From IMG/VR virus record IMGVR_UViG_3300048672_001051, positions 124,001 to 188,000 of that record: a stretch of DNA of 64,000 nucleotides; one strand, given 5' to 3'. Within the stretch, counting starts at the first letter, position 1; every line of letters begins with the position of its first letter. A program made the translations under genes and the position numbers. Below the pieces are notes generated by a model, which did not search any database, had not been told where the DNA came from, and saw nothing but the letters and a program-made list of their open reading frames with translations. Shown here piece by piece: positions 20,181-34,933 of this stretch.

Positions 20181-20717
20181 TCAACAATATTGTGAGTGGT
20201 TATTTGGTGCAATACAAAAATTGTTAGTCAACAGTTTAAAACAACCTTGAGGTACAATTTTTGAAAGCTTGATATACTCATTGGCATTTAAAAGTTCACG
20301 CACAAGTGTGCCTGAAATGTTTAAATCTGATGTAAAATCACAAAAAGTAACTTTTGGATTTAACTCTAAAATTTGATTTAAATATGTAGTAGTACTTAAG
20401 TCTTTCTTAGAACCCGCTAAATGACTGATATCAAAAAGATCAATGAGTTTTGAAACAGACTGTAGCCAGCTGTTGGTGTCTAAGTCATCGTATAACGGTA
20501 TAAATAAGAATTTATCTGCGTCATCAGATGAAAAAGAATTTTTAATACAGTTGACTCTAAAATTAAAATCAAATGGATTTAAATCGTCTACAATACCTAC
20601 GCCTATAGCGACAACAACATTGTTCAAAGTTTTATTCAAAGCTTGTTGAAGTTGCTGAAAATGTCCATTATGGAAACCTTGAAAACGCCCAACAATTAGA
20701 AAATTTGAGTTAATCAT
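20181..20717 (-). CDS. NMN adenylyltransferase (NadM-like, HxGH nucleotidyltransferase)
   Basis: GRFQGFHNGH and ISGTLVRE motifs. Confidence 0.8.
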   Translation of the reverse strand: MINSNFLIVGRFQGFHNGHFQQLQQALNKTLNNVVVAIGVGIVDDLNPFDFNFRVNCIKNSFSSDDADKFLFIPLYDDLDTNSWLQSVSKLIDLFDISHLAGSKKDLSTTTYLNQILELNPKVTFCDFTSDLNISGTLVRELLNANEYIKLSKIVPQGCFKLLTNNFCIAPNNHSQYC

Positions 20718-21195
20718 TTTGACAACCTTGAAGCTTTTTAATTAAATTATCAGCAACTTCAGCAGTAAAACCATAACTATTATCAATTTTTAGAAACTTA
20801 GTTTCATGTTGATAACTTGCATCAGAATCGTCGTCTAAGACGTAGTAATCTTCACAAGTGTTATTGGCTAACCAGTCGGAGATTTGCAAGCCACGGGCAA
20901 TTAAGCCCGCGCGCTTACGGTGTTCTTCAGGTACTAAATCTTTGCAAGTTGTTGAACCAACAACTTCTGCTGTTAAACCCATTGATTTACAAACTATCTG
21001 TAAAGTTTGAAAGTCATATAGTTTGCGCCAACTACTGCTGACAACTATTTTAAAATTACAAACATCAGTTAAGCGATTAATATTTGCAATTAATATTGGA
21101 GAATAAGAATCAATATCATTAGATTGTAATGTTACTAAGTCTGTCGACTCACAAGCATTTATAACACCATCAAAATCAAGAAAAAGAATTTTCAT
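20710..21195 (-). CDS. HAD-family phosphatase (RNA-repair type)
   Basis: FLDFDGV, VVSSSWR, VLDDD; start trimmed to exclude tRNA-Trp. Confidence 0.85.
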   Translation of the reverse strand: MKILFLDFDGVINACESTDLVTLQSNDIDSYSPILIANINRLTDVCNFKIVVSSSWRKLYDFQTLQIVCKSMGLTAEVVGSTTCKDLVPEEHRKRAGLIARGLQISDWLANNTCEDYYVLDDDSDASYQHETKFLKIDNSYGFTAEVADNLIKKLQGCQND

Positions 21196-21209
21196 GTCTA
21201 AACTCAAAA

Positions 21210-21284
21210 TGGCAGCTATGCACGGACTCGAACCGCAACTAATGGTTTTGGAGACCATTGTCCTGCCAATTAGACGACATAGCT
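21210..21284 (-). tRNA. tRNA-Trp(CCA)
   Basis: ATGGT-CT-CCA-AA-ACCAT; CCA. Confidence 0.93.
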
Positions 21285-21291
21285 ACAACAA

Positions 21292-23829
21292 TTAACGATA
21301 CATTTTTGTTAAATATTTTGTTAACAAAAACTGTGCGTGTAAATCAGAACGCTCTTCTGCGTACTCAATTTCTAACTCAGTTGAAAGCTCTTGTAAACGT
21401 TTATCAATTTTAAGTAATAAAGAGTCAAGGCTAAAAGTCATTTCATTTAAACCTACCACTTTTAAACCTGCCAAAGTTTTTAAACGTGATATGGCAACAT
21501 AACCCTGACCTTTTTCAAAAACTTTTGATAAATCTATCTCAGCTTCGTCTAAACTCATACCTTGACAGTTTGACATTACAAAGCCATTTTGAATAAAATT
21601 TCCAGCATTTGGAACCTCAACACATTGCGATTCAAGTTCAATATTGACTAAATTTTCAATTCGAACGTAATAAAAATCTAACAAGTCAGAACAAATTGAA
21701 GGTACATAATCTCTAGTGACGTAACCTCTTTTTAAACTAGCTTTATACATTGTATAAGATATGTATTTATTCGTATACCAATTTAAAAGAGTTTCCTTAG
21801 TTACTGGAACTCTACTATTAGAATCAGTTCTGATAATAGTGTAATTTAAAAGTCTTTGTTGATTAAATTTATTTATAAATCCGACATAATCTCTAAAAAG
21901 CTTGCAGTACTTACCATAAATATATAAATAAGTAATGTTATCTTTTTTTGATATTGTACAAGCAATCCCTACACGTAATAAGACTTGCTGTACAAATTGA
22001 CAAACAGTAAAAGATTTATTAGCAAATTCAATGTGATCTACTTTACTTTGTTTAATATTTACAGTGCCGTCTTCATAAAGACCTTTTAAAAAAGATAACT
22101 GAACAGAAAGGGGTGATTGTTTTATAATATGAGGAACTTGTTTTAAATTTGAAACTAATTCAGGACACCACTCATTCAGTATATAATGAGAAAGATGACG
22201 AGAACAGACTTCAAATTGATAAAAATCTTTACCACCCACATTTAAAATTCTAATAGGGTTATCAACGACATTAAATAAATTAATACATAATTGTTTAAAA
22301 CGTTCTACTGTTTCAATATGTTTTTTAGTTAAGCTAAAAGAACTTTTTCTAACAGTTCCGTCAGCTAAAAGCAATCCTAAGAATTCTGAGAAATTTTCAT
22401 CAAGTACTTCTGGTAATTTGTATTTTACAGTGCGTACATCAAATATTTTTGAAGTCGCAGATGACAATTTTAAATAAGGACTATTACATGTTTGATTAAG
22501 TTTCAGTTTAAGCCATTGACCTACAATAAGCTCTTTAGCTTCTACATAATTCCAAGAATCTCCAGTAAAAGCTAAGCACTTGTGAGAATCAGTGACCTTA
22601 ATACTATAGTTACGCTCACAAATAATTTCTTTTCCAGTTAGTAAGTGGTTATTAACTTTATTAACATAAGGCAACACTTCAAACTCAGTTTGTATTGCGC
22701 CTGACTCTTGTATATCTTTAATCTGCAATAAGCCTTGAGTAGTATTAACATAAGTGTCAGGATGAATACACTTATGGACTGTTATAGCGTAAGCAAGCGT
22801 TAAAGGCACTTGAGTATAAGTAGCGGTGTTACCAGCGCCATTGTTTTCAAAACGCCATTCAACAGGGTCGGCAGTCACTGTTAATCCTGTTGTTAATTTA
22901 ACTTTAGGATAATATTGACCATTAAATCTTTCAAAACCTACGACTGTACCTTGAGACCCATTAGCGTACTGTCCATTTATGTTGTCATTTTTAACAAACA
23001 TAACTTTAGTGTTAAGTTTTAATTCAAGAACTTCAGGAGCTTTAATATTTGCTTTTAACATATCTACAAATATAGATTTACCTGTAGTTTTAGCCTTATT
23101 AGTATACACAATACCTGGCAGGGCATCAAAATGTTGTTTATTAATAGCTGTAACGTCTCTGTTGTGAGTATACAACTTTAAAGGATTTGTGAGCGTATTT
23201 GAAGAAGTCGCAGCAATAATATCAATGTGCTCTTGAGTGACAGTTTGAGATCTTATTGCATTTAAAATATCATTTAACTTATCACCATCAGCTTGACGAT
23301 ATTGTTTTGTTAAGTAGCAAGACTTAAAATTTGCTCTAACCCAAACAGGTGACATAAAGCAAAATTTATCGCGATTGGCTTCACCATTAGTACTAACTGG
23401 TGGTAATTGTAGCCCATCACCAGCTAATATAACTTGAAGACCGCCAAATGGTTTTTCACTCTGCCGTAGCCTACGTAGTACAAAATCAATTGCTTCAAAC
23501 TGATCTTTGTGCAACATAGATATTTCATCAATAACTAAAACGCGAGCTTTAATTATCTTCATGTATTTTATTTGATTTTTCTTAATCTTGTCGACATGTG
23601 TTTGTGTAATGTGGCTTTTAATTCCAATGCCAGTCCAAGAGTGAATTGTCTGACCATCAATATTTGTAGCTGCAATACCTGTAGACGCAGTAATAGCGTA
23701 AGGCACGTTACGAGCTTTAAGATAGTCTAAATACACTTTTAAAGTATAAGATTTACCAACACCTGCAGAGCCAGTTAAAAATACATTGGCACCTGTTTTA
23801 AGAATATTTAAAGCAGTTGTTTGATCCAT
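21292..23829 (-). CDS. Pif1-family SF1B helicase precursor containing an intein
   Basis: GSAGVGKS, IDEISM, GDGLQLPP, AITVHK|CQG, YVAISR. Confidence 0.92.
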   Translation of the reverse strand: MDQTTALNILKTGANVFLTGSAGVGKSYTLKVYLDYLKARNVPYAITASTGIAATNIDGQTIHSWTGIGIKSHITQTHVDKIKKNQIKYMKIIKARVLVIDEISMLHKDQFEAIDFVLRRLRQSEKPFGGLQVILAGDGLQLPPVSTNGEANRDKFCFMSPVWVRANFKSCYLTKQYRQADGDKLNDILNAIRSQTVTQEHIDIIAATSSNTLTNPLKLYTHNRDVTAINKQHFDALPGIVYTNKAKTTGKSIFVDMLKANIKAPEVLELKLNTKVMFVKNDNINGQYANGSQGTVVGFERFNGQYYPKVKLTTGLTVTADPVEWRFENNGAGNTATYTQVPLTLAYAITVHKCIHPDTYVNTTQGLLQIKDIQESGAIQTEFEVLPYVNKVNNHLLTGKEIICERNYSIKVTDSHKCLAFTGDSWNYVEAKELIVGQWLKLKLNQTCNSPYLKLSSATSKIFDVRTVKYKLPEVLDENFSEFLGLLLADGTVRKSSFSLTKKHIETVERFKQLCINLFNVVDNPIRILNVGGKDFYQFEVCSRHLSHYILNEWCPELVSNLKQVPHIIKQSPLSVQLSFLKGLYEDGTVNIKQSKVDHIEFANKSFTVCQFVQQVLLRVGIACTISKKDNITYLYIYGKYCKLFRDYVGFINKFNQQRLLNYTIIRTDSNSRVPVTKETLLNWYTNKYISYTMYKASLKRGYVTRDYVPSICSDLLDFYYVRIENLVNIELESQCVEVPNAGNFIQNGFVMSNCQGMSLDEAEIDLSKVFEKGQGYVAISRLKTLAGLKVVGLNEMTFSLDSLLLKIDKRLQELSTELEIEYAEERSDLHAQFLLTKYLTKMYR
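21568..22770 (-). mobile_element. 401-aa intein with LAGLIDADG endonuclease
   Basis: Starts CIHPDT after TVHK, ends FVMSN before Cys+1; FLGLLLADG and FLKGLYEDG motifs. Confidence 0.92.
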
Positions 23830-24823: not shown

Positions 24824-24900
24824 TGGAGCTTGTGCAGAGACTTTAACTCTGTATCACTGGATTTGCAATCCAGTCCCTCGAACACTTCGGGTTAACAAGC
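24824..24900 (-). tRNA. tRNA-Cys(GCA)
   Basis: CTGGA-TT-GCA-AA-TCCAG; atypical T-loop TTAAAGT; T73; CCA. Confidence 0.85.
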
Positions 24901-24904
24901 ATGT

Positions 24905-25114
24905 TTAATGGATGTTTAAAACATACCACAAAATACAACCTGCAACAATTGAAGAAGCTGCAGAAACTAAAAAACTTGCGAAATATGATTTAAAATCACA
25001 ATCTTTTTTTAAAACTTCAGGTGGAGTAGTTTGAGGGCTGCTGGATGCAATTCCCAAATCGTTACCCAGACCATCCCACATTTCAAAACAATTTTGAGAG
25101 TAAATGTTAAACAT
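24905..25114 (-). CDS. Small membrane protein
   Basis: C-terminal hydrophobic helix. Confidence 0.55.
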   Translation of the reverse strand: MFNIYSQNCFEMWDGLGNDLGIASSSPQTTPPEVLKKDCDFKSYFASFLVSAASSIVAGCILWYVLNIH

Positions 25115-25130
25115 AAAAATACCTTAAAAA

Positions 25131-25261
25131 GTACAAGGCCAGGACTCGAACCTGGAACCAGCTGATTGGTCGATGTAAACCTTTACTACAACACTCTATG
25201 GAGGTTAAAAGTGCAAAAGTTACTTTTTGTCGGCTGCTCTACCGATTGAGCTACCCTGTAC
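25131..25261 (-). ncRNA. tRNA-shaped RNA with about 60-nt insert in place of the anticodon loop; candidate Y (Yrl) RNA
   Basis: Acceptor (G)TACAGGG/CCTTGTA(C), canonical D and T arms, no CCA, followed by U run; starts 11 nt after TROVE stop. Confidence 0.75.
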
Positions 25262-25272
25262 TATTTTAAAAC

Positions 25273-26736
25273 TTAAACTGAAAGTGTATTAATTAACACT
25301 TCAGCATCACCAGACATGCTAAGGTATTGTAAGATGTTGTCGCTATAGCCTGCAAACTGAGTCCAACCATTAGATGGCTGTGCAGCAGATGTAGGTGAGC
25401 GGCCCATATTAAAAGCAAATTTATGCTCAATACTTCTAAAAAAGCTGTCAAAAGAATTGCCAGTGGCTAAAGACTGCAGCTGCATGTCTGAAAACATGAA
25501 CACAGTGTCTAATTCAACATTTGGAATGTTGTCAACAATACTTGCTAAATTAGTTCCACCGCCGACATCAAAGTGTTTAATCTTATTAATGATATCTTGA
25601 TAAGAATCACTAACAGACACTTCAATATTTTTAGAGAATGTGCCAAAGGTTGTAATGTAAACTGGTATGTTGTAATTATGTAATGATTTACAAATCACAG
25701 CAGCCAGAAAAGCACTATTATTCATTGGAATGCCCTGCATTGACAAGCTTGCGTCAACAACTAACCAACAAGCTCGTTTAGAAACTTGTGGAACATTGTC
25801 AATAGCGTAGCCCAAAGCTTGCACTAACTCGCTTTTGTACGATTGCGTTTGGTCGATAGCTGAATAAAACTGATATGGATACAGTTTTGCTCTAGCTACT
25901 GAACGACGATCGACAAGTTTTGAGCGAATTAAACTTTGAATTTCAGTTAAGCTTTCTGAAGCAACAAGCATACTAATAGACATGCGTTCGATATTAGCTA
26001 AGTTTTTAAGCAAAGCTTGATAACCGAGTTTATTGTTGCGTAGAAGGCTTAACCAACTGTCAATTCGAGCTTGAGGTGTTGAATTTTGCGAACTATCACT
26101 AAGCAAAACTTCGTGAGTGTCAGGTTTTTCTAAAGTATTATTTAAAATACATTTAAAAATACGTGACTGCTCAGAATCCTTAGGTTGAGGCCTTGCTGTT
26201 AAAATAAGAAACTTCAAATTGACATTGTTAATCTTTCGGTTATATTTGCCAAATTGATAAGCATCAAACTTATTTAAACCAACTTCCAAAGATTTTTTTA
26301 CAATTTTAGGAAGTTCTTTAGGCAGCAAACCGCCTGCAAGTAAATTACCAACTAGTTTCAACATGTCATCGACACGATAAAAATACTCGCCAATCAACTT
26401 ATAAGAGTTTGGAGGAAACTCAGTACAAGTTAAAAGATAGCTAGTTAGTAAATCTAAAGGTGCTTGTTTTAACCCAAGTATATGCCGTGCAAAAATAGCC
26501 AGATTAAAAACAAATTTACTTTCACCTGCAGCGTGTAAGTCTGCAAGTAGTTTAATAACAACAGTCTGAAGTTCAGTCTGTGTGTGGTAAAAAGTATCAC
26601 CTTTAATTAAACTGTTCAACACAATGTTTAAAAGTTGTTGTTTAGAGCTTAAAGTTAGTTGAGGATTCCCCTCAAGAGAAATTGACATTTTTGTCATTTG
26701 AACATCGCCTTTTAAAAGGGAAATGCTGACTTTCAA
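25273..26736 (-). CDS. Ro60/TROVE domain protein with C-terminal vWA
   Basis: FGKYNRK, THEVLLS, YQALLKNLANI, LYPYQFYSA, VVDASLSM, GGTN, FSDMQ. Confidence 0.85.
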   Translation of the reverse strand: MKVSISLLKGDVQMTKMSISLEGNPQLTLSSKQQLLNIVLNSLIKGDTFYHTQTELQTVVIKLLADLHAAGESKFVFNLAIFARHILGLKQAPLDLLTSYLLTCTEFPPNSYKLIGEYFYRVDDMLKLVGNLLAGGLLPKELPKIVKKSLEVGLNKFDAYQFGKYNRKINNVNLKFLILTARPQPKDSEQSRIFKCILNNTLEKPDTHEVLLSDSSQNSTPQARIDSWLSLLRNNKLGYQALLKNLANIERMSISMLVASESLTEIQSLIRSKLVDRRSVARAKLYPYQFYSAIDQTQSYKSELVQALGYAIDNVPQVSKRACWLVVDASLSMQGIPMNNSAFLAAVICKSLHNYNIPVYITTFGTFSKNIEVSVSDSYQDIINKIKHFDVGGGTNLASIVDNIPNVELDTVFMFSDMQLQSLATGNSFDSFFRSIEHKFAFNMGRSPTSAAQPSNGWTQFAGYSDNILQYLSMSGDAEVLINTLSV

Positions 26737-26760
26737 TTGAAAGTCAGCTTTAAATTTAAA

Positions 26761-27909: not shown

Positions 27910-28392
27910 TCAGGTGAGCATTAGCTTAATAGTTTCTCGAACTTCCATAAGTACAAGACCCAGCTTATTTTCACCTAGCCATTTTTCTTTTTTATAGATA
28001 TCTGGATTATATAAACTTAAACCAACACCCCAAAGTAAATCTTTAGGTGAGGCTTCAACAAGAATTTTATCACCAGTTTCTAAAAGACGAGTACGGATAT
28101 AAGGATTTTGCATAAACTTCAACAAGTTAGCTTCCACCATATACTCGTATGAAACTTGCAACCAATCTTCAGGTACAAAGTTGGCTACACGTCGACCAAA
28201 ACCTTTAATTTCGTCTGGGTTTGAAGTCTTTAAAATCTTTTGTGCAATTTTTACATCGTTGAAATACAAAGCTTTAGAATACATAAAGTATTGCTCAGTG
28301 CTCGTAAACCAATGATTATAGCGATCGCTATAAAATTTTGTAATATAAAAATTACTAAAATAATTTTTATAAAAAGGTACTATGTTATTCAC
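27910..28392 (-). CDS. NADAR (YbiA-like) family protein
   Basis: FSNFY, EQYFMYSKA, LVEASPKDLLWGVG, GENKLG. Confidence 0.92.
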   Translation of the reverse strand: MNNIVPFYKNYFSNFYITKFYSDRYNHWFTSTEQYFMYSKALYFNDVKIAQKILKTSNPDEIKGFGRRVANFVPEDWLQVSYEYMVEANLLKFMQNPYIRTRLLETGDKILVEASPKDLLWGVGLSLYNPDIYKKEKWLGENKLGLVLMEVRETIKLMLT

Positions 28393-28540
28393 GGAGTAAC
28401 TCGTTTATTTTTAATATTACGGGAATTTCGCCATGTACGATAAGATGTTTTCTTTGTTGTAAGCCAACATCCAAAAACATAAAACCAGTAAAGAGCTGTA
28501 ATAAGCCCAATCAACGCTAAAACATTTGTTACACTGATAA

Positions 28541-29167
28541 TCAGCATGTTTGAACACTCTCTGCCTTAATGAGGTTGAAAATAGTTTTATACAAACCTGG
28601 ATGAATATCATGCAAAAGTGGTGTAACTTGTGCACGAATTCTATTACGCCTATATTTTAAATTTGAATTGGATTTATCTGTGTGATAACAGATTGAATGC
28701 CTAGCTGCATACTCGTAAAAATCATTCTTACGTACAAGCAAAAATGGTCTTATAACATTAACTGTCGAGTATGGAATTAACTTAGGCTTGCCAGTAAGAC
28801 AAGTCATAATCCAATTTTCAACCTGATCATCTAAATGATGACCAGTGATAATTGGGTATTCTTTTTTAGTGAAAAAGTTATAACGTTGTCTATGATAATA
28901 ACTTTCTTCATTAACAGAAGAGTCAGTTAATTTTTTTAGATAGTCAATATGCAACTTAATGTTTGGGTATTCTTTAACATTCGACCAATAAAAATTTAAA
29001 ACTGCATTTAAATTTGCAGAACTATCTTGTGTATAATGCCACAAGTAGTGGATATGAATTTCACGGCTTTTTGATTGCATTAAAAAATGAACAATACTCA
29101 AGCTGTCAACACCGCCAGAACAAGCTACACCTAAAATATTAGGAATTTTACCAAGAAGTTCAAACAT
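28541..29167 (-). CDS. tilS: tRNA(Ile)-lysidine synthetase, N-terminal catalytic domain only
   Basis: PP-loop ACSGGVDS, GHHLDDQVE, RPFL, DKSN...RRNRIR; 208 aa. Confidence 0.82.
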   Translation of the reverse strand: MFELLGKIPNILGVACSGGVDSLSIVHFLMQSKSREIHIHYLWHYTQDSSANLNAVLNFYWSNVKEYPNIKLHIDYLKKLTDSSVNEESYYHRQRYNFFTKKEYPIITGHHLDDQVENWIMTCLTGKPKLIPYSTVNVIRPFLLVRKNDFYEYAARHSICYHTDKSNSNLKYRRNRIRAQVTPLLHDIHPGLYKTIFNLIKAESVQTC

Positions 29168-29179
29168 ACAATTTCGCTA

Positions 29180-29836
29180 TTAAGTAAAGTCTACTTCAGG
29201 CATAATTTTTTGATAAATCATTGTATTCATGTCTAACTCATATTCCAGCTCTGGTGGGAAATGAATGTGTGCATCTGGGCTGATATAAATCCGCAAAGTA
29301 TGATCTGGAGAGATGCCTTCAATGAGACCAATAAATTGGACTTCGTGTGCCATTTCTGGGAAAAATGGGAAAATCCAAGGAGTATCTTGATTATACGTAA
29401 GAAGCAAATATTCATAAGCTTCCATATGTAAATCAAAATCATCAATCATTTTCAGACGAATTTTATGAGGATACTCAGCAGTTGGTACCGTTTGACGGAC
29501 AACAGACCCATCGCTAGGTGTTGGAGTAGGTTCAACATAAGCACTCATTTGAGCAATACGTTCCAACAGTGCAGCGTCTGTCGCTGACACACCAGTAGTA
29601 GCTTGGATAGTTTCTTGTGGTGTACTGAAAGTTGCAGTAGGCTCAGATGTGGGAGCTAATGTCGCTGCAGCTTCTGTAGGTGCAGCAGCTACAACTGGCT
29701 GAATATTCAGCTGACTAGCAAGACTTTGCGTAGTTGTCACTGTAGCATCAGCAACCACAAGCTGCGGTGTATTTGCATTACGAGCATCTAAAGCGGTTTG
29801 TAGATTATTAGTCACTGTCATAGAGATTATACTCAA
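29180..29836 (-). CDS. Hypothetical protein with Ala/Thr/Pro-rich linker
   Basis: 218 aa; low-complexity N half, globular acidic C half. Confidence 0.7.
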   Translation of the reverse strand: MSIISMTVTNNLQTALDARNANTPQLVVADATVTTTQSLASQLNIQPVVAAAPTEAAATLAPTSEPTATFSTPQETIQATTGVSATDAALLERIAQMSAYVEPTPTPSDGSVVRQTVPTAEYPHKIRLKMIDDFDLHMEAYEYLLLTYNQDTPWIFPFFPEMAHEVQFIGLIEGISPDHTLRIYISPDAHIHFPPELEYELDMNTMIYQKIMPEVDFT

Positions 29837-29869
29837 TTGATATTTATGTTGATAATTTTAAAAATAAAA

Positions 29870-30178
29870 GACCTAGCTTTGATCCTAAGGCTAGGGCTTA
29901 GCCTACACACCAGCTACGAGTAAACACCAAGGACAGACCCCTTGTAAAAACATATACGTAGATTTTAAAAAGCTTTAAGCATTACGCTTTAAACTTTGCC
30001 TATCATAAACTTTTAGCTTTTAGCTTTAAGCTTTAAGCTTTAAGAGTCGAAAAGCACCGTCTTGCCAGAAGCAAGACAGTCCACTTTTTTATCTTATGAT
30101 AGCGGTAATAAATAATGGCTATTACCAAGCCCGTCTGTAACGGTATTTGCAGTGTGCAAGTAAAGATCAGTTCAAATA
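29870..30178 (-). ncRNA. Candidate structured RNA with tandem T(T/A)AAAG(C/T) heptamers
   Basis: Five tandem 7-mers at 30008-30044 plus two more nearby; multiple hairpins; 9-bp long-range stem. Confidence 0.55.
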
Positions 30179-30799
30179 CTAAAGTTCGAGTTCGACTTTA
30201 ATATTAATATTTGCTTCTGAAAGTACAGTGTCAAGTTCTGATTTCAAGAACTCAATCTGTACAGCCATTGCTTCCATATGCTCAGCTGGGGTACTTGAAG
30301 AGCCTTTATAAGCTAAGATAACTGGACAATGTAACTTGTCCAAACTATCTTTAAACGAGGCCACCATATCTGCAGGTGTAGTCGGATCCATTTTAGCTAA
30401 AGTTTGTGCTTCATAAGCTTCAGCAATTTTTTGAGTATCAAGAAATTGCCGACGATACGTAGCTAAAATAGTCTCAAGCTCTGCCACATAATTTTTACGA
30501 ATAATGGCTTCAGCAATAGACATTTCTACACCATTCACAACAACAGTGTTTTCAACGTTTGCTTTAGCAATAGCACTTTTAATGCGAATAATTTGATCTG
30601 CTTTTGCAGTCAGGCTTTGGCCTGACGACATAATAGCATTATTCAAACTTTTATCATCTGGATACGTCTTCAAACTTGGGCGACGTGTTTGAGTTCCAAT
30701 TACAAGACTGACAAGTACAGAACGATCTAATAGTTTTTTAAAACTATCAGGATGCTGTTTAACCATACTGAGAAGACGATGAAGGGTGTACTGGGCCAT
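30179..30799 (-). CDS. Coiled-coil protein, DIP1984-like from memory (start at MAQYTLHRLL)
   Basis: TLHRLL, MSIAEAIIRK, IEFLKSELDTVLSEAN pattern. Confidence 0.65.
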   Translation of the reverse strand: MAQYTLHRLLSMVKQHPDSFKKLLDRSVLVSLVIGTQTRRPSLKTYPDDKSLNNAIMSSGQSLTAKADQIIRIKSAIAKANVENTVVVNGVEMSIAEAIIRKNYVAELETILATYRRQFLDTQKIAEAYEAQTLAKMDPTTPADMVASFKDSLDKLHCPVILAYKGSSSTPAEHMEAMAVQIEFLKSELDTVLSEANINIKVELEL

Positions 30800-30945
30800 A
30801 AAAAATCCTATGTTTAAGTGTAAAGGAAAAAAGAAATAATAAGAAAAAGAATAGTTGTAGTATAGTAAATAAAACAACAATATTCTTTACAAAATAATGT
30901 TAAAAATTTCATGTTTAACCTTCAAAGGTAAACAAAGGCATTAAT

Positions 30946-30979
30946 GATGCTCCCTCTTATTTAAATAAGAGGGAGCATC
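30946..30979 (-). terminator. Terminator-like hairpin after NAMPT-like gene
   Basis: 15-bp perfect stem GATGCTCCCTCTTAT/ATAAGAGGGAGCATC. Confidence 0.7.
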
Positions 30980-30982
30980 TAG

Positions 30983-31272
30983 TTAAGACCAAAGACGCTG
31001 GCGAATTGCTTCCAATGAAGTTTCAGCAACAAACTGACCATCTTTATAGACAGTTTGAAGACATCCAACAGCTTCTTCTTCAAGTGTCACACTGTCTTTT
31101 AAGACGTATGCGCCACTCTCGCCAACAACTTGCAAAAGACCTTTTGCAGATTTTTTTGAAGAATCTGTTTTAGGATCTTTATAAATTGCTTGTGATTGGC
31201 CATTAACAATAGCGTTAGTGGCTTTCACTGCAGTGCCCAAATGATCACGAGAAAGCATATTCAAAGAGAATG
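30983..31272 (-). CDS. nadV: NAMPT-like protein, exon 2
   Basis: Splicing gives GVG-S-FSLNMLSRDHLGTAVKAT...KDPKTD...KKSAKG, matching the NAMPT C-terminus. Confidence 0.88.
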
Positions 31273-32289
31273 CATTTTTAAATAGTCGCCTAAAGGCGAT
31301 ACTACAGGAATATTAAAAAGTTCTGTCGACCAGTTCGTAAACACGCGAAAACTTTTATGCGTGTCTAAAATTAGTTGTTCAATCTGATAGGCAGTGTATA
31401 AATTTGTTTGTAAGCTGTCTAATAAGCTAACAGAGAGTTTAGACTTACTTTCAATAGCTTTTAAACGCTTATCTAAATTAGTCGTAATACCTATTTTATA
31501 ATAGGGTCCAACTTTTAAATAATAGACAAAAGCATTTACAAATTTTTTATCAGGATTTCTCAAAAAGAAACAATCTGAATAATTGCCGAGTAATTTTTTA
31601 TTTGCAACTAAATCGTCTATAGCACATCTAAAACAATGCTGACCTTGCAAATGTTTTGCAAAAGATTTTTTAAACAATCCGTGAATTGGGCATACAATAT
31701 CAATTACACTACGCATATTAACATATAAATCCAAATTTGTTTTAGGATAAATATATTTAAAATTGTAGTGATTATTGCAACGATTGATAACAGAATAATA
31801 GTCAGAAGTTCTTGTAACTTTAGATAAGTTAATGACACATCTCGGACAAAATTCTGTATATAATCTTTTATAAGCAAAATTTGTTAATTGATAAAAATAT
31901 GCACAATTTTTACAAATAAAATTTACTTTCAACTCTTTAAGAGTTGTTACAGTCGGTTGATCAACAACTTCATAAATAAAAGCATTAGTTTCGAAATTTT
32001 CCTTTAAAAGTGTTAAACGTTCTAAAAACTTATTAGCCATAGCTTTTGACAAATTAACATGCCTTTTTAAAGCTACGGCTGCAGCTGTAGATTGTTTATA
32101 CTCTTTTAAACATAAATGACAAGAATGTTTAGCTTGTAAATGCTTATCAGCTGTTTGCTGAAAAACATAGTTATGTTTTAAACATTTTATATCTGATTTA
32201 TCTTTCCAACTTTTAGCTTGGAAATTTGAATAATCGTATAAGCCATTGTAACGATTTTTTGCTTTGTTTATAAAAAACTCAATATTCAT
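31261..32289 (-). CDS. Intron-encoded endonuclease: Zn-finger repeats plus C-terminal GIY-YIG-like (T5orf172-type) domain
   Basis: C-x2-H...H-x4-C-x2-C repeats; VYYLKVGPYYKIGITTNLDKRL; GGAGGT SD. Confidence 0.8.
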   Translation of the reverse strand: MNIEFFINKAKNRYNGLYDYSNFQAKSWKDKSDIKCLKHNYVFQQTADKHLQAKHSCHLCLKEYKQSTAAAVALKRHVNLSKAMANKFLERLTLLKENFETNAFIYEVVDQPTVTTLKELKVNFICKNCAYFYQLTNFAYKRLYTEFCPRCVINLSKVTRTSDYYSVINRCNNHYNFKYIYPKTNLDLYVNMRSVIDIVCPIHGLFKKSFAKHLQGQHCFRCAIDDLVANKKLLGNYSDCFFLRNPDKKFVNAFVYYLKVGPYYKIGITTNLDKRLKAIESKSKLSVSLLDSLQTNLYTAYQIEQLILDTHKSFRVFTNWSTELFNIPVVSPLGDYLKMHSL

Positions 32290-32640
32290 CTAGTATTACA
32301 CCTCCATTTTTTGTGTTAATTATTATAACACAAAAATTAAAAATGTAAATTTAAAAATGGACTATATCTTCACTCCTAAATAAGGAGGCTTCCTGTTTCG
32401 GGTGATAAAACCCTACTCTACTCGCTTCTTCGGGTAGTTAACCCTATGCTTTCGATAGTCTCTGAACTCTCATCTGTATTTATTATACAGATGCTCAGCT
32501 GCGGATTAATTCATCAATAAACTTTTTACTATACCTAGGTCATTACGCTAGCCCTTATCTATATCACTATGATAAGTTAGTATTTATTGATTAAGAACAG
32601 TCCCCGCAATTAAGGAAGTTTTACTTGGGCCATTTTGTTA
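31273..32640 (-). mobile_element. Group I intron, 1368 nt
   Basis: P AATTGCGGGGA 32601-32611, Q AATCCGCAGC 32498-32507, R GTTCAGAGACTAT 32455-32467, S AAGATATAGTCC 32359-32370; P1 TTGGGT/GCCCAA with U.G at splice site; terminal G. Confidence 0.93.
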
Positions 32641-34096
32641 ACCCAACGCCAAATACAATATTGGTGCTAGCAAAGCCTTTCGCTTCAAGCCGTTTGAAAA
32701 TTTCAGTAGCACGTTCAAATGTAATGCCATCGCCATAAATCATACCGATATGACTATCTAGTACTTTATAGCCAAGCTCGTTAACCGTGCCGCCGAATAA
32801 ATCCCAAAGAGCTTCAATTGTGCCTTTGTACTCAACATCAATTTCTTTTTCAACAAAAGACATTACTGCAGTTTTATGATTGAGCTGATAATAATTTGGA
32901 GCTGCACGAACCCACGTTAATTCATTAGCAGTCACAACCCACAGCTTATCATCCCATTTAAAAGACATTGTGTAAGTAGTCACACCTTCTTTATTAGTTG
33001 GTGTGGTAGCTTCGACTTTGTTTGCAATACGCATTTTACAAACACTTAAAAATTCATCAAAAGTCTCAGCAGACTCTTTTGAAATTTCAATGTATTGCAA
33101 ATTTGTACCTGTAATGATATCGACAGGATTGCCGGAATCACCACGAATAACAAATTTGCCATCACGCGACATAATTTTGTCTTTGTGAATTGGTAAAATG
33201 TTTTCAATAACATTCCAATAGTCATAACTGTCAGCTACATAGCTGACAATACCCGTTTTGAATTGATTCAATACGTAGTCAATATACTTGACTTCACCAT
33301 CGTACTTATCATCAGGGTTAGACATTGTAATACCTAAAGTGGTAACACTATGCTCACCAGCTGGGACTGAATAGGCAATAGGTTGTTTTGAAATATCAGC
33401 ATTATAGTACTGTTCTAAGTACATGATTGCAGGCATATTATCTGAGCCCAAAGAGCTTAGAAGAAAACCTGCACCATTTGCTGCTGAACTTTCAAAACCA
33501 CTTTGACCGCGGAATGAAAAATCATGCAATTGAAAATCTACACCATCTGTTGAACCAGTGGTTTTGATTGCTGCCGCATTAGCTAAAATACGGAACAATC
33601 GGCCAACAGTTGCAACTGTCATTGGCTTCCAAATCTGAGCACTCAAGATAGTCTCAAGATAATTTGGAAGCCACTGAAAATCTGGATGAGTATTTTTTAT
33701 AGTAAACAGTGGAATGTTTGGTTGTACTAAGGAACCTTCAGGCAAGCCTTTGATTTCAATAGGTAAATAGCCCAAATCATGCAACTGTTCAAAATGCGAG
33801 TAATCACTCATACCGATGTATGGCGTGAGTACACGTTTCATCTCAGCGATAACTTCATCTTTTGGCTGATTAAAAAATGTGTCATTCCACATATTGTGAA
33901 AAATTTCTTTGATAGCTGCTTGCAAACCAAAGAAAACAATTTGATCATCAAACAACGGATAAAGTTGTTTCAAATAATGCGTAAATCGAGCAGTAAAGTT
34001 CGAATAAATCTGCTGTGTACCTGGAGTGGTAAACTGAATATGACTCAATTTGTATGAGTCTGTTAGTAGTGCTGCAAAAGCTGGAGTTAACTTCAT
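32641..34096 (-). CDS. nadV: NAMPT-like protein (NadV or Namat), exon 1; spliced product 581 aa
   Basis: LTDSYKLSH, YLET, LHDFSFRG, PAGEHS, VADSYD, RGDSGNP, IYGDGIT. Confidence 0.92.
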
Positions 34097-34105
34097 AAAA
34101 ATCTC

Positions 34106-34933
34106 TTAAAAATCATTAGCTGTTTTAACAAACATAGTATTAATCATACCATGCCAATTATAATAAGCATAAACCATGTCAATATCTACAAGCAGAGGTT
34201 CGAGACCTTTACTGAAAATACCATGAGTAATGTATAGTGTAACAGTTTTAGCGCCAGCTTCTTTTAAAGCTTTAGCTAGTTGGATAAAAGTCCAACCACC
34301 GTCGCAGATATCATCTGCAATTAAAACATCCAAACCGTCAACAGGATCAGTTACACGAGTACCTGTGATTGCACCAGTAGTGACATCACGGTCTTTCAAT
34401 GCAACAATTAACTTGTTGACGCCAAGAGCTTTGCTAACATTTAAACACTTTTTATAAGCACCAGCATCTGGACTAATAATAGCGTCAAAAGTTTTTCCAA
34501 AGTCGAATGTTTTAATACACTCATATTGATTTATAACATAAGAGTTATTAATTAAAGCTGGAGCAACATCACTGTGAGGATCAGTTACTATAACTTTAGG
34601 AAGATTGAAGCTATTTAGCAATTCTGCAAATAACTTTAAACTTTGAGCATCACCTTCAACCATTGCACGATCTTGACGTGCAAAAGAGATATATGGCAGA
34701 TATAACACAATATCAGAAGATGTTGATTTGAGGACGCTTAAGACTTGGAGCAATGCAAGAACGCCACTGGAATCTTTTATTTTCGCAGTAACATTAAAGC
34801 TATCACAAGTGTTAGCAGCCCCTAGAGTGACTTGTACTTCTCCAGCTGAGAAAGTTTTGCAACTCACCTCAAGTGGGATTGTTGTTTGAAGTCCTTTGAG
34901 ACGACCAACAACGGTAATTAATGATTTCATCAT
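34106..34933 (-). CDS. prs: Ribose-phosphate pyrophosphokinase-like protein (PRS or Adps)
   Basis: FSAGEV, PYISFARQDR, DPHSDV, SPDAGA, ADDICDGGWTF, THGIFSKG. Confidence 0.9.
   Translation of the reverse strand: MMKSLITVVGRLKGLQTTIPLEVSCKTFSAGEVQVTLGAANTCDSFNVTAKIKDSSGVLALLQVLSVLKSTSSDIVLYLPYISFARQDRAMVEGDAQSLKLFAELLNSFNLPKVIVTDPHSDVAPALINNSYVINQYECIKTFDFGKTFDAIISPDAGAYKKCLNVSKALGVNKLIVALKDRDVTTGAITGTRVTDPVDGLDVLIADDICDGGWTFIQLAKALKEAGAKTVTLYITHGIFSKGLEPLLVDIDMVYAYYNWHGMINTMFVKTANDF

What the first reader, a model, noticed from the sequence alone, without database searches (positions are those of the whole stretch)
25131..26736. Ro60/TROVE gene followed by a tRNA-shaped RNA with a giant anticodon insert: candidate non-permuted Y RNA
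Seen: 11 nt after the TROVE stop lies a 131-nt element with an acceptor stem, a canonical D arm (TAGCTCAATCGGTAGAGC) and T arm (CCAGG-TTCGAGT-CCTGG). It has no CCA, ends in a U run, and has about 60 nt in place of the anticodon loop, flanked by GCCGA and TCGACC. Established: bacterial Ro60 genes are typically flanked by Y RNAs; YrlA mimics tRNA but has its ends in the Ro-binding helix (permuted). Inference: this RNA keeps normal tRNA topology and places Y-like GNCGA/UNGACC motifs in the anticodon arm, so it may be a distinct Y-RNA architecture for a phage RNA-surveillance or decoy RNP.
Basis: partly seen in the sequence, partly recalled or inferred. Interest (0 to 1): 0.8.

Follow-up and report, generated by a model that had tools for sequence, protein, structure and literature searches.

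The report
tRNA-shaped Y RNA beside phage Ro60
Twelve bases after a phage Ro60 (TROVE) gene lies a tRNA-shaped RNA gene whose anticodon loop is replaced by a conserved 44-base two-helix module. It is one member of a widespread class, in phages and bacteria, that I found described in no paper or Rfam family and that looks like the un-permuted counterpart of the known bacterial Y RNA YrlA.

Summary
A 129-nt tRNA-shaped element lies on the minus strand at 25132-25260, 12 nt after the stop codon of a TROVE+vWA (Ro60) gene. It has no encoded CCA and is followed by a U run. The Rfam tRNA model scores 41.8 bits with a 63-nt insertion in the anticodon loop; YrlA does not hit.

GCCGA pairs with UCAGC (two compensated pairs in a 78% relative), and TCGACC is not conserved.

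The insert holds a 44-nt module:
- P1, 9 bp
- a U-rich internal loop
- P2, a hairpin with a bulged U
- the motif UGUAG
- a UAC junction

I collected 107 members from phage contigs, crAss001 and bacterial genomes. In them 92% of structure cells pair, against 64% when shuffled, and 32 of 34 pairs show double changes. Every member near a TROVE gene lies on its strand.

The helix order matches YrlA's Ro60-binding module, but the ends are closed by a loop and the acceptor stem is open. The best reading is therefore a non-permuted Y RNA. Binding, expression and function are untested. The window copy lacks a usable anticodon loop, though most members keep one. Novelty: new variant of a known kind.

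The parts
25273..26736 (-). Ro60 homologue (TROVE + vWA with a MIDAS DxSxS motif). The listed ORF starts at TTG 26736. The real start is probably ATG 26697, because a 10-bp palindrome covers the TTG.
   Evidence: Pfam TROVE 5e-13, VWA_2. PDB 9KOP/9L5Y phiLo Ro60, E 3.6e-10. D328/S330/S332/T395/D417 are invariant among 19 homologues. Hairpin at 26725-26748.
25131..25260 (-). The whole tRNA-shaped RNA gene: 129 nt plus the discriminator C.
   Evidence: Rfam tRNA 41.8 bits with a 63-nt insertion. Family models R1 103.7 bits and R2 103.1 bits.
25254..25260 (-). Acceptor stem, 5' strand UACAGGG.
   Evidence: Pairs with 25132-25138. The G5.U68 wobble becomes A-U in L004 and in the X2 variant. The family acceptor is 94-98% paired, and all 7 pairs show double changes.
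25236..25251 (-). D arm GCUC-AAUCGGUA-GAGC, preceded by U8 A9.
   Evidence: U8-A14 is present in 33 of 33 members. The Levitt pair is A15:U48 here and G15:C48 in L004.
25230..25234 (-). Anticodon stem, 5' strand GCCGA.
   Evidence: Pairs with UCAGC at 25161-25165, with a C29.A41 mismatch. In L004 the stem is ACAGG/CCAGU: pairs 27-43 and 31-39 are compensated and the mismatch is kept.
25222..25229 (-). A-rich linker CAAAAAGU.
   Evidence: The family linker usually starts UAAAA or AAAAA.
25213..25221 (-). Module helix P1, 5' strand AACUUUUGC.
   Evidence: Pairs with 25178-25186. L004 keeps all 9 pairs through three one-sided changes. Family P1: 180 of 207 cells pair, against 125 +/- 6.5 with shuffled partners. 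In the model alignments 82-84% pair, and all 8 pairs show double changes.
25207..25212 (-). U-rich 5' side of the internal loop, ACUUUU.
   Evidence: U-rich in most members.
25190..25206 (-). Module hairpin P2: AACCUC-CAUA-GAG-U-GUU, with the bulged U at 25193.
   Evidence: The bulged U is present in 17 of 17 members of its subgroup. Across 107 members the bulge is a pyrimidine in 86. P2 is 89-92% paired, and all 5 pairs show double changes.
25187..25189 (-). 3' side of the internal loop. With the preceding U it reads UGUAG in the family register; this is the equivalent of GNCGAA/CGAA.
   Evidence: This segment starts CG in 51 members and UG in 46 of 107. Exactly UGUAG occurs in 5.
25178..25186 (-). 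Module helix P1, 3' strand GUAAAGGUU.
   Evidence: As for the P1 5' strand.
25166..25177 (-). Junction UACAU, then CGACCAA in place of an anticodon loop.
   Evidence: UAC follows P1 in 101 of 107 members. Here position 33 would be G. L004 has CUCCCAA.
25161..25165 (-). Anticodon stem, 3' strand UCAGC.
25156..25160 (-). Variable loop UGGUU.
25139..25155 (-). T arm CCAGG-UUCGAGU-CCUGG.
25132..25138 (-). Acceptor stem, 3' strand CCUUGUA.
25126..25131 (-). Discriminator C followed by five U. No CCA is encoded.

Best explanation
The element is a gene for a roughly 130-nt non-coding RNA that partners the adjacent phage Ro60 protein. It is a Y RNA built on an intact, un-permuted tRNA frame.

Shown:
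- It has a 7-bp acceptor stem with free ends, a D arm, a T arm, a variable loop and the tRNA tertiary pairs.
- The 5-bp anticodon stem is closed not by a 7-nt loop but by an A-rich linker, a 44-nt module and a UAC junction. The module consists of P1, an asymmetric internal loop, and hairpin P2 with a bulged U.
- Read from the tip towards the T arm, the module has the same order of elements as the 5' strand of YrlA and of animal Y RNAs: lower bulged helix, YG-N-A-G motif, upper helix, short junction, anticodon-stem strand, variable loop, T arm. The difference is that the lower helix is closed by a tetraloop instead of ending in the RNA termini.

Inferred:
- The RNA is transcribed with, or just behind, the TROVE mRNA.
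- It is cut out by RNase P at the 5' end and ends or is trimmed at the U run. The host enzyme probably adds CCA.
- Ro60 binds the bulged distal helix on its outer surface.
- The tRNA-like body is the effector or gating domain, as proposed for YrlA. It could tether Ro60 to a host tRNA-binding enzyme or to an exoribonuclease such as PNPase during infection.

The window copy has no usable anticodon loop: position 33 would be G, the CM register leaves only a 4-nt loop, and the stem has a mid-stem mismatch. It is therefore not a decoding tRNA.
For: - Anatomy and tRNA-model hit.
- Orthologue L004 (TROVE 78% identical): the element is 87% identical, and the changes in the acceptor stem, anticodon stem and P1 all preserve pairing.
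- A third variant in run X2 has 2 changes in the 129-nt element, both structure-neutral, against 17 changes in 228 nt of adjacent TROVE coding sequence.
- Family of 33 phage members: 91.5% of cells paired, against 61.6% shuffled and at most 45% when slid.
- Family of 107 members from phages and bacteria: 92.1% paired against 63.7% shuffled, and 32 of 34 pairs show double changes.
- Levitt-pair covariation: G15:C48 in 80 members and A15:U48 in 17.
- Conserved single-stranded features: UAC in 101 of 107, YG in 97 of 107, a pyrimidine bulge in 86 of 107.
- Linkage to TROVE: 44 of 114 pattern-scan loci carry a TROVE-family ORF; every element within 2.5 kb of one is on the same strand, none opposite. 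Of 115 bacterial loci, 81 carry a TROVE ORF within 8 kb, all on the same strand.
- The module type tracks the protein clade.
- YrlA consensus and topology: PMC4201824, bioRxiv 10.1101/312249.
- Phage Ro60 binds phage-encoded Y-like RNAs and host PNPase (PMC12135203).
Against: - There are no expression, end-mapping or binding data. No RNA run was listed.
- The Rfam YrlA model does not hit the element.
- The window's motif is UGUAG rather than GNCGAA.
- The TROVE clade nearest to the window's has no detectable member.
- The characterised phiLo Yrl RNAs are not of this class, so no experiment covers this architecture.
- Covariation was counted on alignments fitted to the model, and I chose the P1 strands by eye before counting them.
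- Seventy-one of 107 members keep a 7-nt loop with U33. Something other than pure mimicry may therefore be selected in the family.
Confidence: 0.6

Rival explanations
1. It is an intron-containing tRNA gene. The linker, module and UAC junction are excised and the halves ligated to give an ordinary tRNA. Ro60 would act as a chaperone or quality-control factor for that precursor, or be unrelated to it.
For: The module sits at a fixed site in the anticodon arm, with conserved boundaries (UAAAA ... UACUU). Seventy-one of 107 members keep a 7-nt loop with U33 and 27 different anticodons. Some have bodies typical of a specific tRNA; L078:6614-6738, for example, looks like tRNA-Gly(UCC) with a U73 discriminator. 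L004 would give the loop CUCCCAA. 'Enigmatic' tRNA introns have been noted in Lak phages (PMC6784885).
Against: For the window copy, exact excision leaves CGACCAA (G33) on a stem with a C.A mismatch, and an acceptor stem without glycine identity (sequence). The insert of 57-63 nt is too short for a group I intron, and no intron family hits it. No splicing endonuclease of the archaeal or eukaryal kind is known in bacteria (10.1101/312249). The strong covariation and conserved loops of the module are more than a passive intron needs. L201 holds a separate ordinary tRNA-Cys besides its module-bearing 'Cys' element.
Confidence: 0.15
2. It is a cis-acting 3' element of the TROVE mRNA. The tRNA-like structure would serve mainly to define or stabilise the mRNA 3' end through RNase P cleavage or termination, and would have no role of its own in trans.
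For: It starts 12 nt after the stop codon. It has no convincing promoter of its own; the one -10/-35-like site at 25292-25263 matches 9 of 12 positions, no better than in shuffled sequence. A U run follows it.
Against: In other members the element lies upstream of TROVE, hundreds of bases away, or in tandem sets of two or three. That does not fit a 3'-end role. The conserved 44-nt module is not needed for RNase P recognition.
Confidence: 0.08
3. It is a decayed tRNA pseudogene that picked up an arbitrary insertion.
For: It has no canonical anticodon loop and default tRNA finders miss it.
Against: Compensatory changes occur in every helix across 107 members. The element is nearly invariant between strains. 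It is linked to TROVE in a strand-specific way.
Confidence: 0.02

Closest known systems
YrlA (Y RNA-like A; Rfam RF02553), the Ro60/Rsr partner in Salmonella, Mycobacterium, mycobacteriophages and others
   Same: It is encoded next to Ro60 on the same strand. Its D arm (GUAGCUCA..GGUAGAGC) and T arm (GGUUCGAxUCC) are nearly the same, and it shows the same tRNA tertiary pairs including Levitt-pair covariation. The Ro60-binding module has the same order: lower helix with the GNCG-type motif, a ~5-nt loop, a 7-9-bp upper helix, a short junction, an anticodon-like stem, a variable loop and the T arm (PMC4201824).
   Different: YrlA is circularly permuted (T arm, closed acceptor stem-loop, D arm). 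Its ends lie in the Ro60-binding helix, and it has no free acceptor end and no anticodon loop (10.1101/312249). Here the acceptor stem is open, the Ro-type helix is closed by a tetraloop, and most family members keep an anticodon-like loop. The YrlA covariance model gives no hit.
Mycobacterium smegmatis YrlA after processing
   Same: It has a 7-bp acceptor stem. RNase P cleaves it and CCA is added, so a Y RNA with a free tRNA-like acceptor end exists in vivo (PMC4201824).
   Different: That end is made by cutting a closed loop of a permuted RNA, which leaves the Ro-binding helix open as well. Here the open acceptor is encoded as such.
Deinococcus radiodurans Yrn1
   Same: It has been modelled with the order D-like loop, anticodon-like arm, T arm, that is, not permuted (PMC4201824).
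   Different: In Yrn1 the Ro60-binding stem takes the place of the acceptor stem. Here it extends from the anticodon arm, and the acceptor is an ordinary 7-bp stem.
Animal Y RNAs (hY1, hY3, hY4, hY5)
   Same: They have a bulged lower helix contacted by Ro60, then an upper helix, then a loop that, as I recall the sequences, begins GUUAUC or GUUUAC, much like the family's GUUAC/GUUAUC and the window's GUUUAC. That resemblance is from memory and was not tested here.
   Different: They have no tRNA-like domain, and their termini lie in the lower helix.
Phage phiLo Ro60 with Yrl1/Yrl2
   Same: A phage Ro60 homologue binds RNAs encoded next to its gene and assembles with host PNPase (PMC12135203). 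It is the best PDB match of the window's protein.
   Different: The phiLo upstream region gives no match to the family model. Those Yrl RNAs are stem-bulge-stem RNAs whose termini pair.
'Enigmatic introns' in Lak megaphage tRNAs; permuted and intron-bearing tRNA genes of archaea and algae
   Same: These are tRNA genes of phages or cells interrupted in the anticodon region (PMC6784885; 10.1101/312249 discussion).
   Different: No link to Ro60 and no conserved module has been described for them. I did not compare their sequences.

Membership tests
YrlA / bacterial Y RNA (RF02553) | Encoded within about 4 kb of a Ro60/TROVE gene, on the same strand | tested here: met
   12 nt downstream, same strand. 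The family shows no opposite-strand case.
YrlA / bacterial Y RNA (RF02553) | tRNA-like D and T arms with conserved stems and tertiary pairs (U8-A14, G18/G19 with the T loop, Levitt 15:48) | tested here: met
YrlA / bacterial Y RNA (RF02553) | Permuted order T arm, closed acceptor stem-loop, D arm, with the 5' and 3' ends in the Ro60-binding helix | tested here: not met
   The order is D arm, module, T arm, closed by a covarying 7-bp acceptor stem.
YrlA / bacterial Y RNA (RF02553) | GNCGAAN0-1G motif on the strand that leads to the T arm | tested here: inconclusive
   The window has G-U-U-G-U-A-G next to the bulged helix. Family members have GGCGUAG, GCCGAGAG and UGAUG; the segment starts YG in 97 of 107. 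The motif is similar in place and form but does not match the consensus.
YrlA / bacterial Y RNA (RF02553) | Score at or above the Rfam gathering threshold (69 bits) | tested here: not met
   No YrlA hit at E up to 10. Other members are seen only as tRNA with an insertion.
YrlA / bacterial Y RNA (RF02553) | Bound by the Ro60 protein | not testable with these tools
   Needs immunoprecipitation or gel-shift assays.
tRNA (RF00005) | Cloverleaf scoring above the gathering threshold | tested here: met
   41.8 bits against 29, but only by allowing a 63-nt insertion.
tRNA (RF00005) | A 7-nt anticodon loop with U33 on a regular 5-bp stem | tested here: not met
   The loop is replaced by 63 nt. The last 7 nt are CGACCAA (G33), and the stem has C29.A41.
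tRNA (RF00005) | CCA end and aminoacylation | not testable with these tools
   CCA is not encoded. Addition and charging need experiments.
Group I or bulge-helix-bulge tRNA intron | Catalytic core of about 200 nt or more (group I) | tested here: not met
   The insert is 57-63 nt and matches no Rfam intron family.
Group I or bulge-helix-bulge tRNA intron | Bulge-helix-bulge motif at the exon-intron borders | not tested
   The borders lie at a three-way junction. No formal search for the motif was run.
Ro60 / TROVE protein (the neighbouring ORF) | TROVE HEAT-repeat ring plus a C-terminal vWA domain with a MIDAS motif | tested here: met
   Pfam TROVE and VWA_2. DxSxS, T and D are invariant. PDB phiLo Ro60, E 3.6e-10.

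The most novel reading that the evidence does not exclude
Ro60-family proteins, and a sister family (DUF2828+DUF7788+vWA), are routinely paired in phages and bacteria with tRNAs that carry a protein-binding 'handle' inserted in the 5' strand of the anticodon stem. Many of these tRNAs keep genuine anticodon loops. On this reading the class is not merely a tRNA mimic. It would be a system that puts a Ro60 ring on real or near-real tRNAs. It could protect, repair, sequester or decoy anticodon loops in the conflict between phage and host over tRNA cleavage, or it could act as a new protein-assisted kind of tRNA intron. The window's copy would then be a derivative that has lost decoding capacity, and YrlA would be a permuted descendant.
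Probability: 0.3. Interest if true: 0.85.

Novelty: new variant of a known kind. Interest (0 to 1): 0.68.

Why it matters
Y RNAs are the obligate partners of Ro60, a conserved RNA-surveillance protein and human autoantigen. Three questions about the bacterial YrlA class are open: why it mimics tRNA, what binds its tRNA-like domain, and how it arose.

- **Origin of YrlA.** A natural, widespread, un-permuted version gives a plausible ancestor or sibling of YrlA. It has an ordinary acceptor end and the Ro-type helix in the anticodon arm.
- **Missing Y RNAs.** It would explain why YrlA searches found few Y RNAs in delta-proteobacteria (PMC4201824); in these data Sorangium and Polyangium carry this class instead.
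- **Testable functions.** A free acceptor end, and in most members an anticodon-like loop, make specific tests possible: RNase P cleavage, CCA addition, charging, and targeting by anticodon nucleases.
- **Experimental systems.** Cultured systems are available. crAss001 has two unannotated copies after its early TROVE gene, and Chryseobacterium and Sorangium carry members.
- **Annotation.** These genes are currently missed or would be called odd tRNAs. No Rfam family covers them.

Tried and rejected
- Megablast of the locus against 50,697 phage records: no match.
- Exact-pattern scan of viral contigs for the window's module core: only the source contig.
- The same pattern in metagenome contigs: 7 hits, all chance matches with no tRNA-like context.
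- Protein search of 5.8 billion sequences: only one close TROVE relative, at 78% identity; the next is about 30%. The window's own lineage is therefore rare.
- RNA-seq: no RNA run was listed, so splicing and ends could not be tested. Laying DNA contigs showed no allele without the insert. The one 'joint' (table 5c) is a different tRNA-like gene with other flanks.
- MAFFT plus RNAalifold found only the tRNA helices. The insert needed anchoring by hand and covariance models.
- Model R1 placed the window's P1 one base out of register. R2 corrected it.
- phiLo Yrl1/Yrl2 as experimental proxies: not members of this class.
- The window's nearest TROVE clade (L124-L133): only ordinary tRNAs nearby.
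- Whether module-bearing 'Asn' and 'Cys' genes are the only genes for those anticodons in their phages: inconclusive, since only 9 kb was held and a second tRNA-Cys is present.
- Two review papers on bacterial Y RNAs were not held. 'Not described' therefore rests on six full-text searches and on Rfam release 15.
Full report
**1. What is there**

All features lie on the minus strand. An ORF at 25273-26736 encodes a Ro60 homologue:
- Pfam TROVE E 5e-13 plus a vWA domain.
- The MIDAS residues are invariant among 19 homologues.
- The best solved relative is the Ro60 of Thermus phage phiLo, E 3.6e-10.

The window is part of a 229,656-bp IMG/VR phage contig from a freshwater metagenome. It carries 16 tRNA genes, all on the minus strand.

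Twelve bases after the TAA stop (25275-25273) a 129-nt element begins, at 25260-25132. Its parts, in order:
- acceptor UACAGGG/CCUUGUA
- U8 A9
- D arm GCUC-AAUCGGUA-GAGC
- A26
- GCCGA
- 63 nt
- UCAGC
- variable loop UGGUU
- T arm CCAGG-UUCGAGU-CCUGG
- discriminator C
- five U
- no CCA

Default ARAGORN and a 10-kb Rfam scan miss it. Searched alone, the Rfam tRNA model gives 41.8 bits (gathering score 29), E 5e-8, with a 63-nt insertion in the anticodon loop. YrlA gives nothing. ARAGORN in intron mode calls it as the only such gene in the window.

**2.

The covariance alignment pairs GCCGA with UCAGC instead, with a C29.A41 mismatch.

The closest relative is L004, a contig assembled (by Logan) from a public sequencing run; its TROVE protein is 78% identical and its gene order is the same. 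There the stem is ACAGG/CCAGU. Pairs 27-43 and 31-39 are changed on both sides, the central mismatch is kept, and TCGACC has become TCTCCC. The named motifs are therefore not the conserved feature.

**3. The insert is a structured module**

Between the anticodon-stem strands lie:
- an A-rich linker, CAAAAAGU
- a 44-nt module at 25221-25178
- UACAU
- CGACCAA

The module folds as follows:
- P1: AACUUUUGC/GUAAAGGUU, 9 bp
- an internal loop: ACUUUU on the 5' side and (U)GUA on the 3' side
- P2: AACCUC-CAUA-GAG-U-GUU, with a bulged U at 25193

L004 keeps all nine P1 pairs through three one-sided changes.

**4. It belongs to a large family**

*Phage contigs.* I scanned phage contigs for a D arm and a T arm 58-88 nt apart. 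The scan gave at least 114 loci. A scan for TROVE relatives gave 80 more loci.

Elements with a closing 7-bp acceptor fall into two module types. The window's type has these features:
- an 8-10-bp P1
- a U-rich loop
- P2 with a bulged pyrimidine
- a YG-N-A-G segment
- a nearly invariant UAC(UU) junction

Modules are 40-49 nt long.

My own count of P1 gave 180 of 207 canonical cells, against 125 +/- 6.5 (maximum 149) when the strands were re-paired at random among members. The bulged U was present in 17 of 17 members of the subgroup.

*Covariance models.* A model built from 25 members scores the window element at 103.7 bits. The window's ordinary tRNAs reach at most 53.5 bits.
- On 33 members, 91.5% of cells pair, against 61.6% shuffled and at most 45% slid.
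- On 107 members, 92.1% pair against 63.7% shuffled, and 32 of 34 pairs show double changes. By helix: acceptor 94%, P1 84%, P2 92%, T arm 99%.
- Tertiary features hold: U8-A14 in 33 of 33 phage members. The Levitt pair is G15:C48 in 80 members and A15:U48 in 17 of 107; the window has A:U and L004 has G:C.

These alignments are fitted to the model, which inflates the pairing figures somewhat. The slid and shuffled controls and the many pair types argue that the signal is real.

*Strain variant.* A third, roughly 95% identical strain in run X2 has only two changes in the element: G5 to A, which turns the G.U into A-U, and U20 to C in the D loop. The next 228 nt of TROVE coding sequence has 17 changes.

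**5. Linkage to Ro60**

- A TROVE profile finds a TROVE-family ORF in 44 of the 114 pattern-scan loci, although the flanks held are short.
- Every non-permuted element within 2.5 kb of a TROVE gene is on its strand. None is opposite.
- A stricter pattern hit 115 bacterial genome loci, including Sorangium, Polyangium, Chryseobacterium, Chitinophaga, Hymenobacter and Ruminococcus MAGs. Of these, 81 hold a TROVE ORF within 8 kb, all on the same strand.
- Seventy-two elements in the first 100 bacterial loci score at least 62 bits.
- Rfam sees these elements only as tRNA with an insertion.
- The cultured phage crAss001 has two unannotated members after its TROVE gene gp96. That gene is an early gene (PMC8375218).
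- On a TROVE tree the window's module type is scattered among lineages that have classical permuted YrlA. The second module type goes with one deep clade.

**6. Relation to known Y RNAs**

YrlA is described as a circularly permuted tRNA mimic with these features (PMC4201824; bioRxiv 10.1101/312249):
- the order T arm, closed acceptor stem-loop, D arm
- termini in the Ro60-binding helix
- no anticodon loop
- a GNCGAAN0-1G motif near the 5' end

The Rfam consensus reads cggCga-AUGCu-uggGgaa-CUA-cgcc-uGUu-[T arm]...[D arm]-ggcg-uAuG-uucCcca-aAaAcUuG-ucGccg.

The family here has the same order on the strand that enters the T arm: P2 3' strand with bulge, YG-N-A-G, P1 3' strand, UAC, anticodon-stem strand, variable loop, T arm. 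The partner strands follow the D arm in the same way. Helix and loop sizes are similar.

Two things differ:
- The distal helix is closed by a 4-nt loop.
- The acceptor stem is open.

Two other known RNAs are related but distinct. D. radiodurans Yrn1 is also un-permuted in order, but its Ro60 site takes the place of the acceptor stem. M. smegmatis YrlA acquires a free acceptor end only after RNase P cleavage (PMC4201824).

Six full-text searches found no description of this architecture, and no Rfam family covers it. [quoted passage not shown] Either point could explain why the class was missed.

**7. How it probably works**

The following is inferred, not shown.
- The RNA is made with or just after the TROVE message. 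No promoter better than chance was found.
- RNase P releases it at position 1. It ends at the U run and probably receives CCA.
- Ro60 binds the bulged distal helix. The tRNA-like body then acts as the gate or tether, as proposed for other Y RNAs. Phage phiLo Ro60 with its Yrl RNAs recruits host PNPase (PMC12135203).

The window copy cannot decode. Position 33 would be G, the CM register leaves only a 4-nt loop, and the stem has a mismatch.

Seventy-one of 107 family members keep a 7-nt loop with U33, with 27 different anticodons. This keeps two alternatives open for the family:
- The module is a new kind of intron.
- Ro60 is placed on real tRNAs.

For the window element I rate the intron rival at 0.15.

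**8. Verdict**

Function and binding are unproven. It is a new variant of a known kind and is of real interest to the Ro60/Y RNA and phage-tRNA fields.

Noticed in passing
L010, L018, L020, L028, L033, L048, L056 and about 30 more viral loci: A second module type has a hairpin followed by ACAGCAA. It sits at the same site in the anticodon stem, starts with UAAAA, and often occurs in arrays of two to four interrupted tRNA genes. It lies next to DUF2828+DUF7788+vWA proteins, which form a deep sister clade of TROVE (27 of 29 rows of that clade). This looks like a parallel pairing of a protein with a tRNA handle.
   Followed up: partly
L209:4121-4263 and L209:4376-4513 (Bacteroides phage crAss001, MH675552.1): Two members of the family (79.6 and 48.7 bits) lie in the unannotated gap after the TROVE gene gp96 of a cultured phage. 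This is a ready experimental system.
   Followed up: partly
L210-L324 (bacterial genome contigs): The same RNA class lies next to TROVE genes in Sorangium, Polyangium, Chryseobacterium, Chitinophaga, Hymenobacter, Dyadobacter and gut Clostridia MAGs. Rfam YrlA does not hit the five loci tested, apart from one weak hit of 31 bits.
   Followed up: partly
window 24827-24900 (-): A tRNA-Cys(GCA) found by the Rfam tRNA model (41 bits) but missed by ARAGORN. In L004 it follows the Y-like element directly. In the window a 69-aa ORF (24905-25114) lies between them.
   Followed up: no
window 26725-26748: A perfect 10-bp palindromic hairpin (GCUGACUUUC-AAUU-GAAAGUCAGC) between the TerD and TROVE genes. 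It covers the TTG start of the listed ORF, so the TROVE start is probably ATG 26697 and the hairpin may terminate or attenuate transcription.
   Followed up: partly
window 21292-23829 (-): A Pif1-like helicase interrupted by an intein with a LAGLIDADG domain. The relative L004 has an uninterrupted 444-aa Pif1 gene.
   Followed up: no
window 20181-21258 and 27910-34933 (-): A cluster of NAD and ADP-ribose metabolism genes: NADAR, a PP-loop ATPase, NAPRTase/NAMPT, PRPP synthetase and a cytidylyltransferase-like gene. It also includes a HAD domain of the 'Swiss Army Knife' RNA-repair type. TerD and a DPBB protein sit just upstream of TROVE. This could be a counter-defence gene set.
   Followed up: no
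window 25139-25254, run X1 (table 5c): A 151-nt contig from the source sample has the same D and T arm sequences but a different 32-nt middle and different flanks. It is another tRNA-like gene of another genome, not an allele without the insert.
   Followed up: no
L005:4520-4960: After a crAss-like TROVE gene (30% identical) lies a chain of RNAs: a stem-closed Y-like RNA, then tRNA-Trp, then a classical permuted YrlA-like element (Rfam 40.8 bits, below the gathering score). Permuted and tRNA elements are mixed in one locus.
   Followed up: partly
L201:559-633 and L192:898-965: Default ARAGORN calls a 'tRNA-Asn' that starts inside the module of a module-bearing element. The 3' half of the module together with the anticodon and T arms can thus be misread as a whole tRNA.
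   Followed up: no
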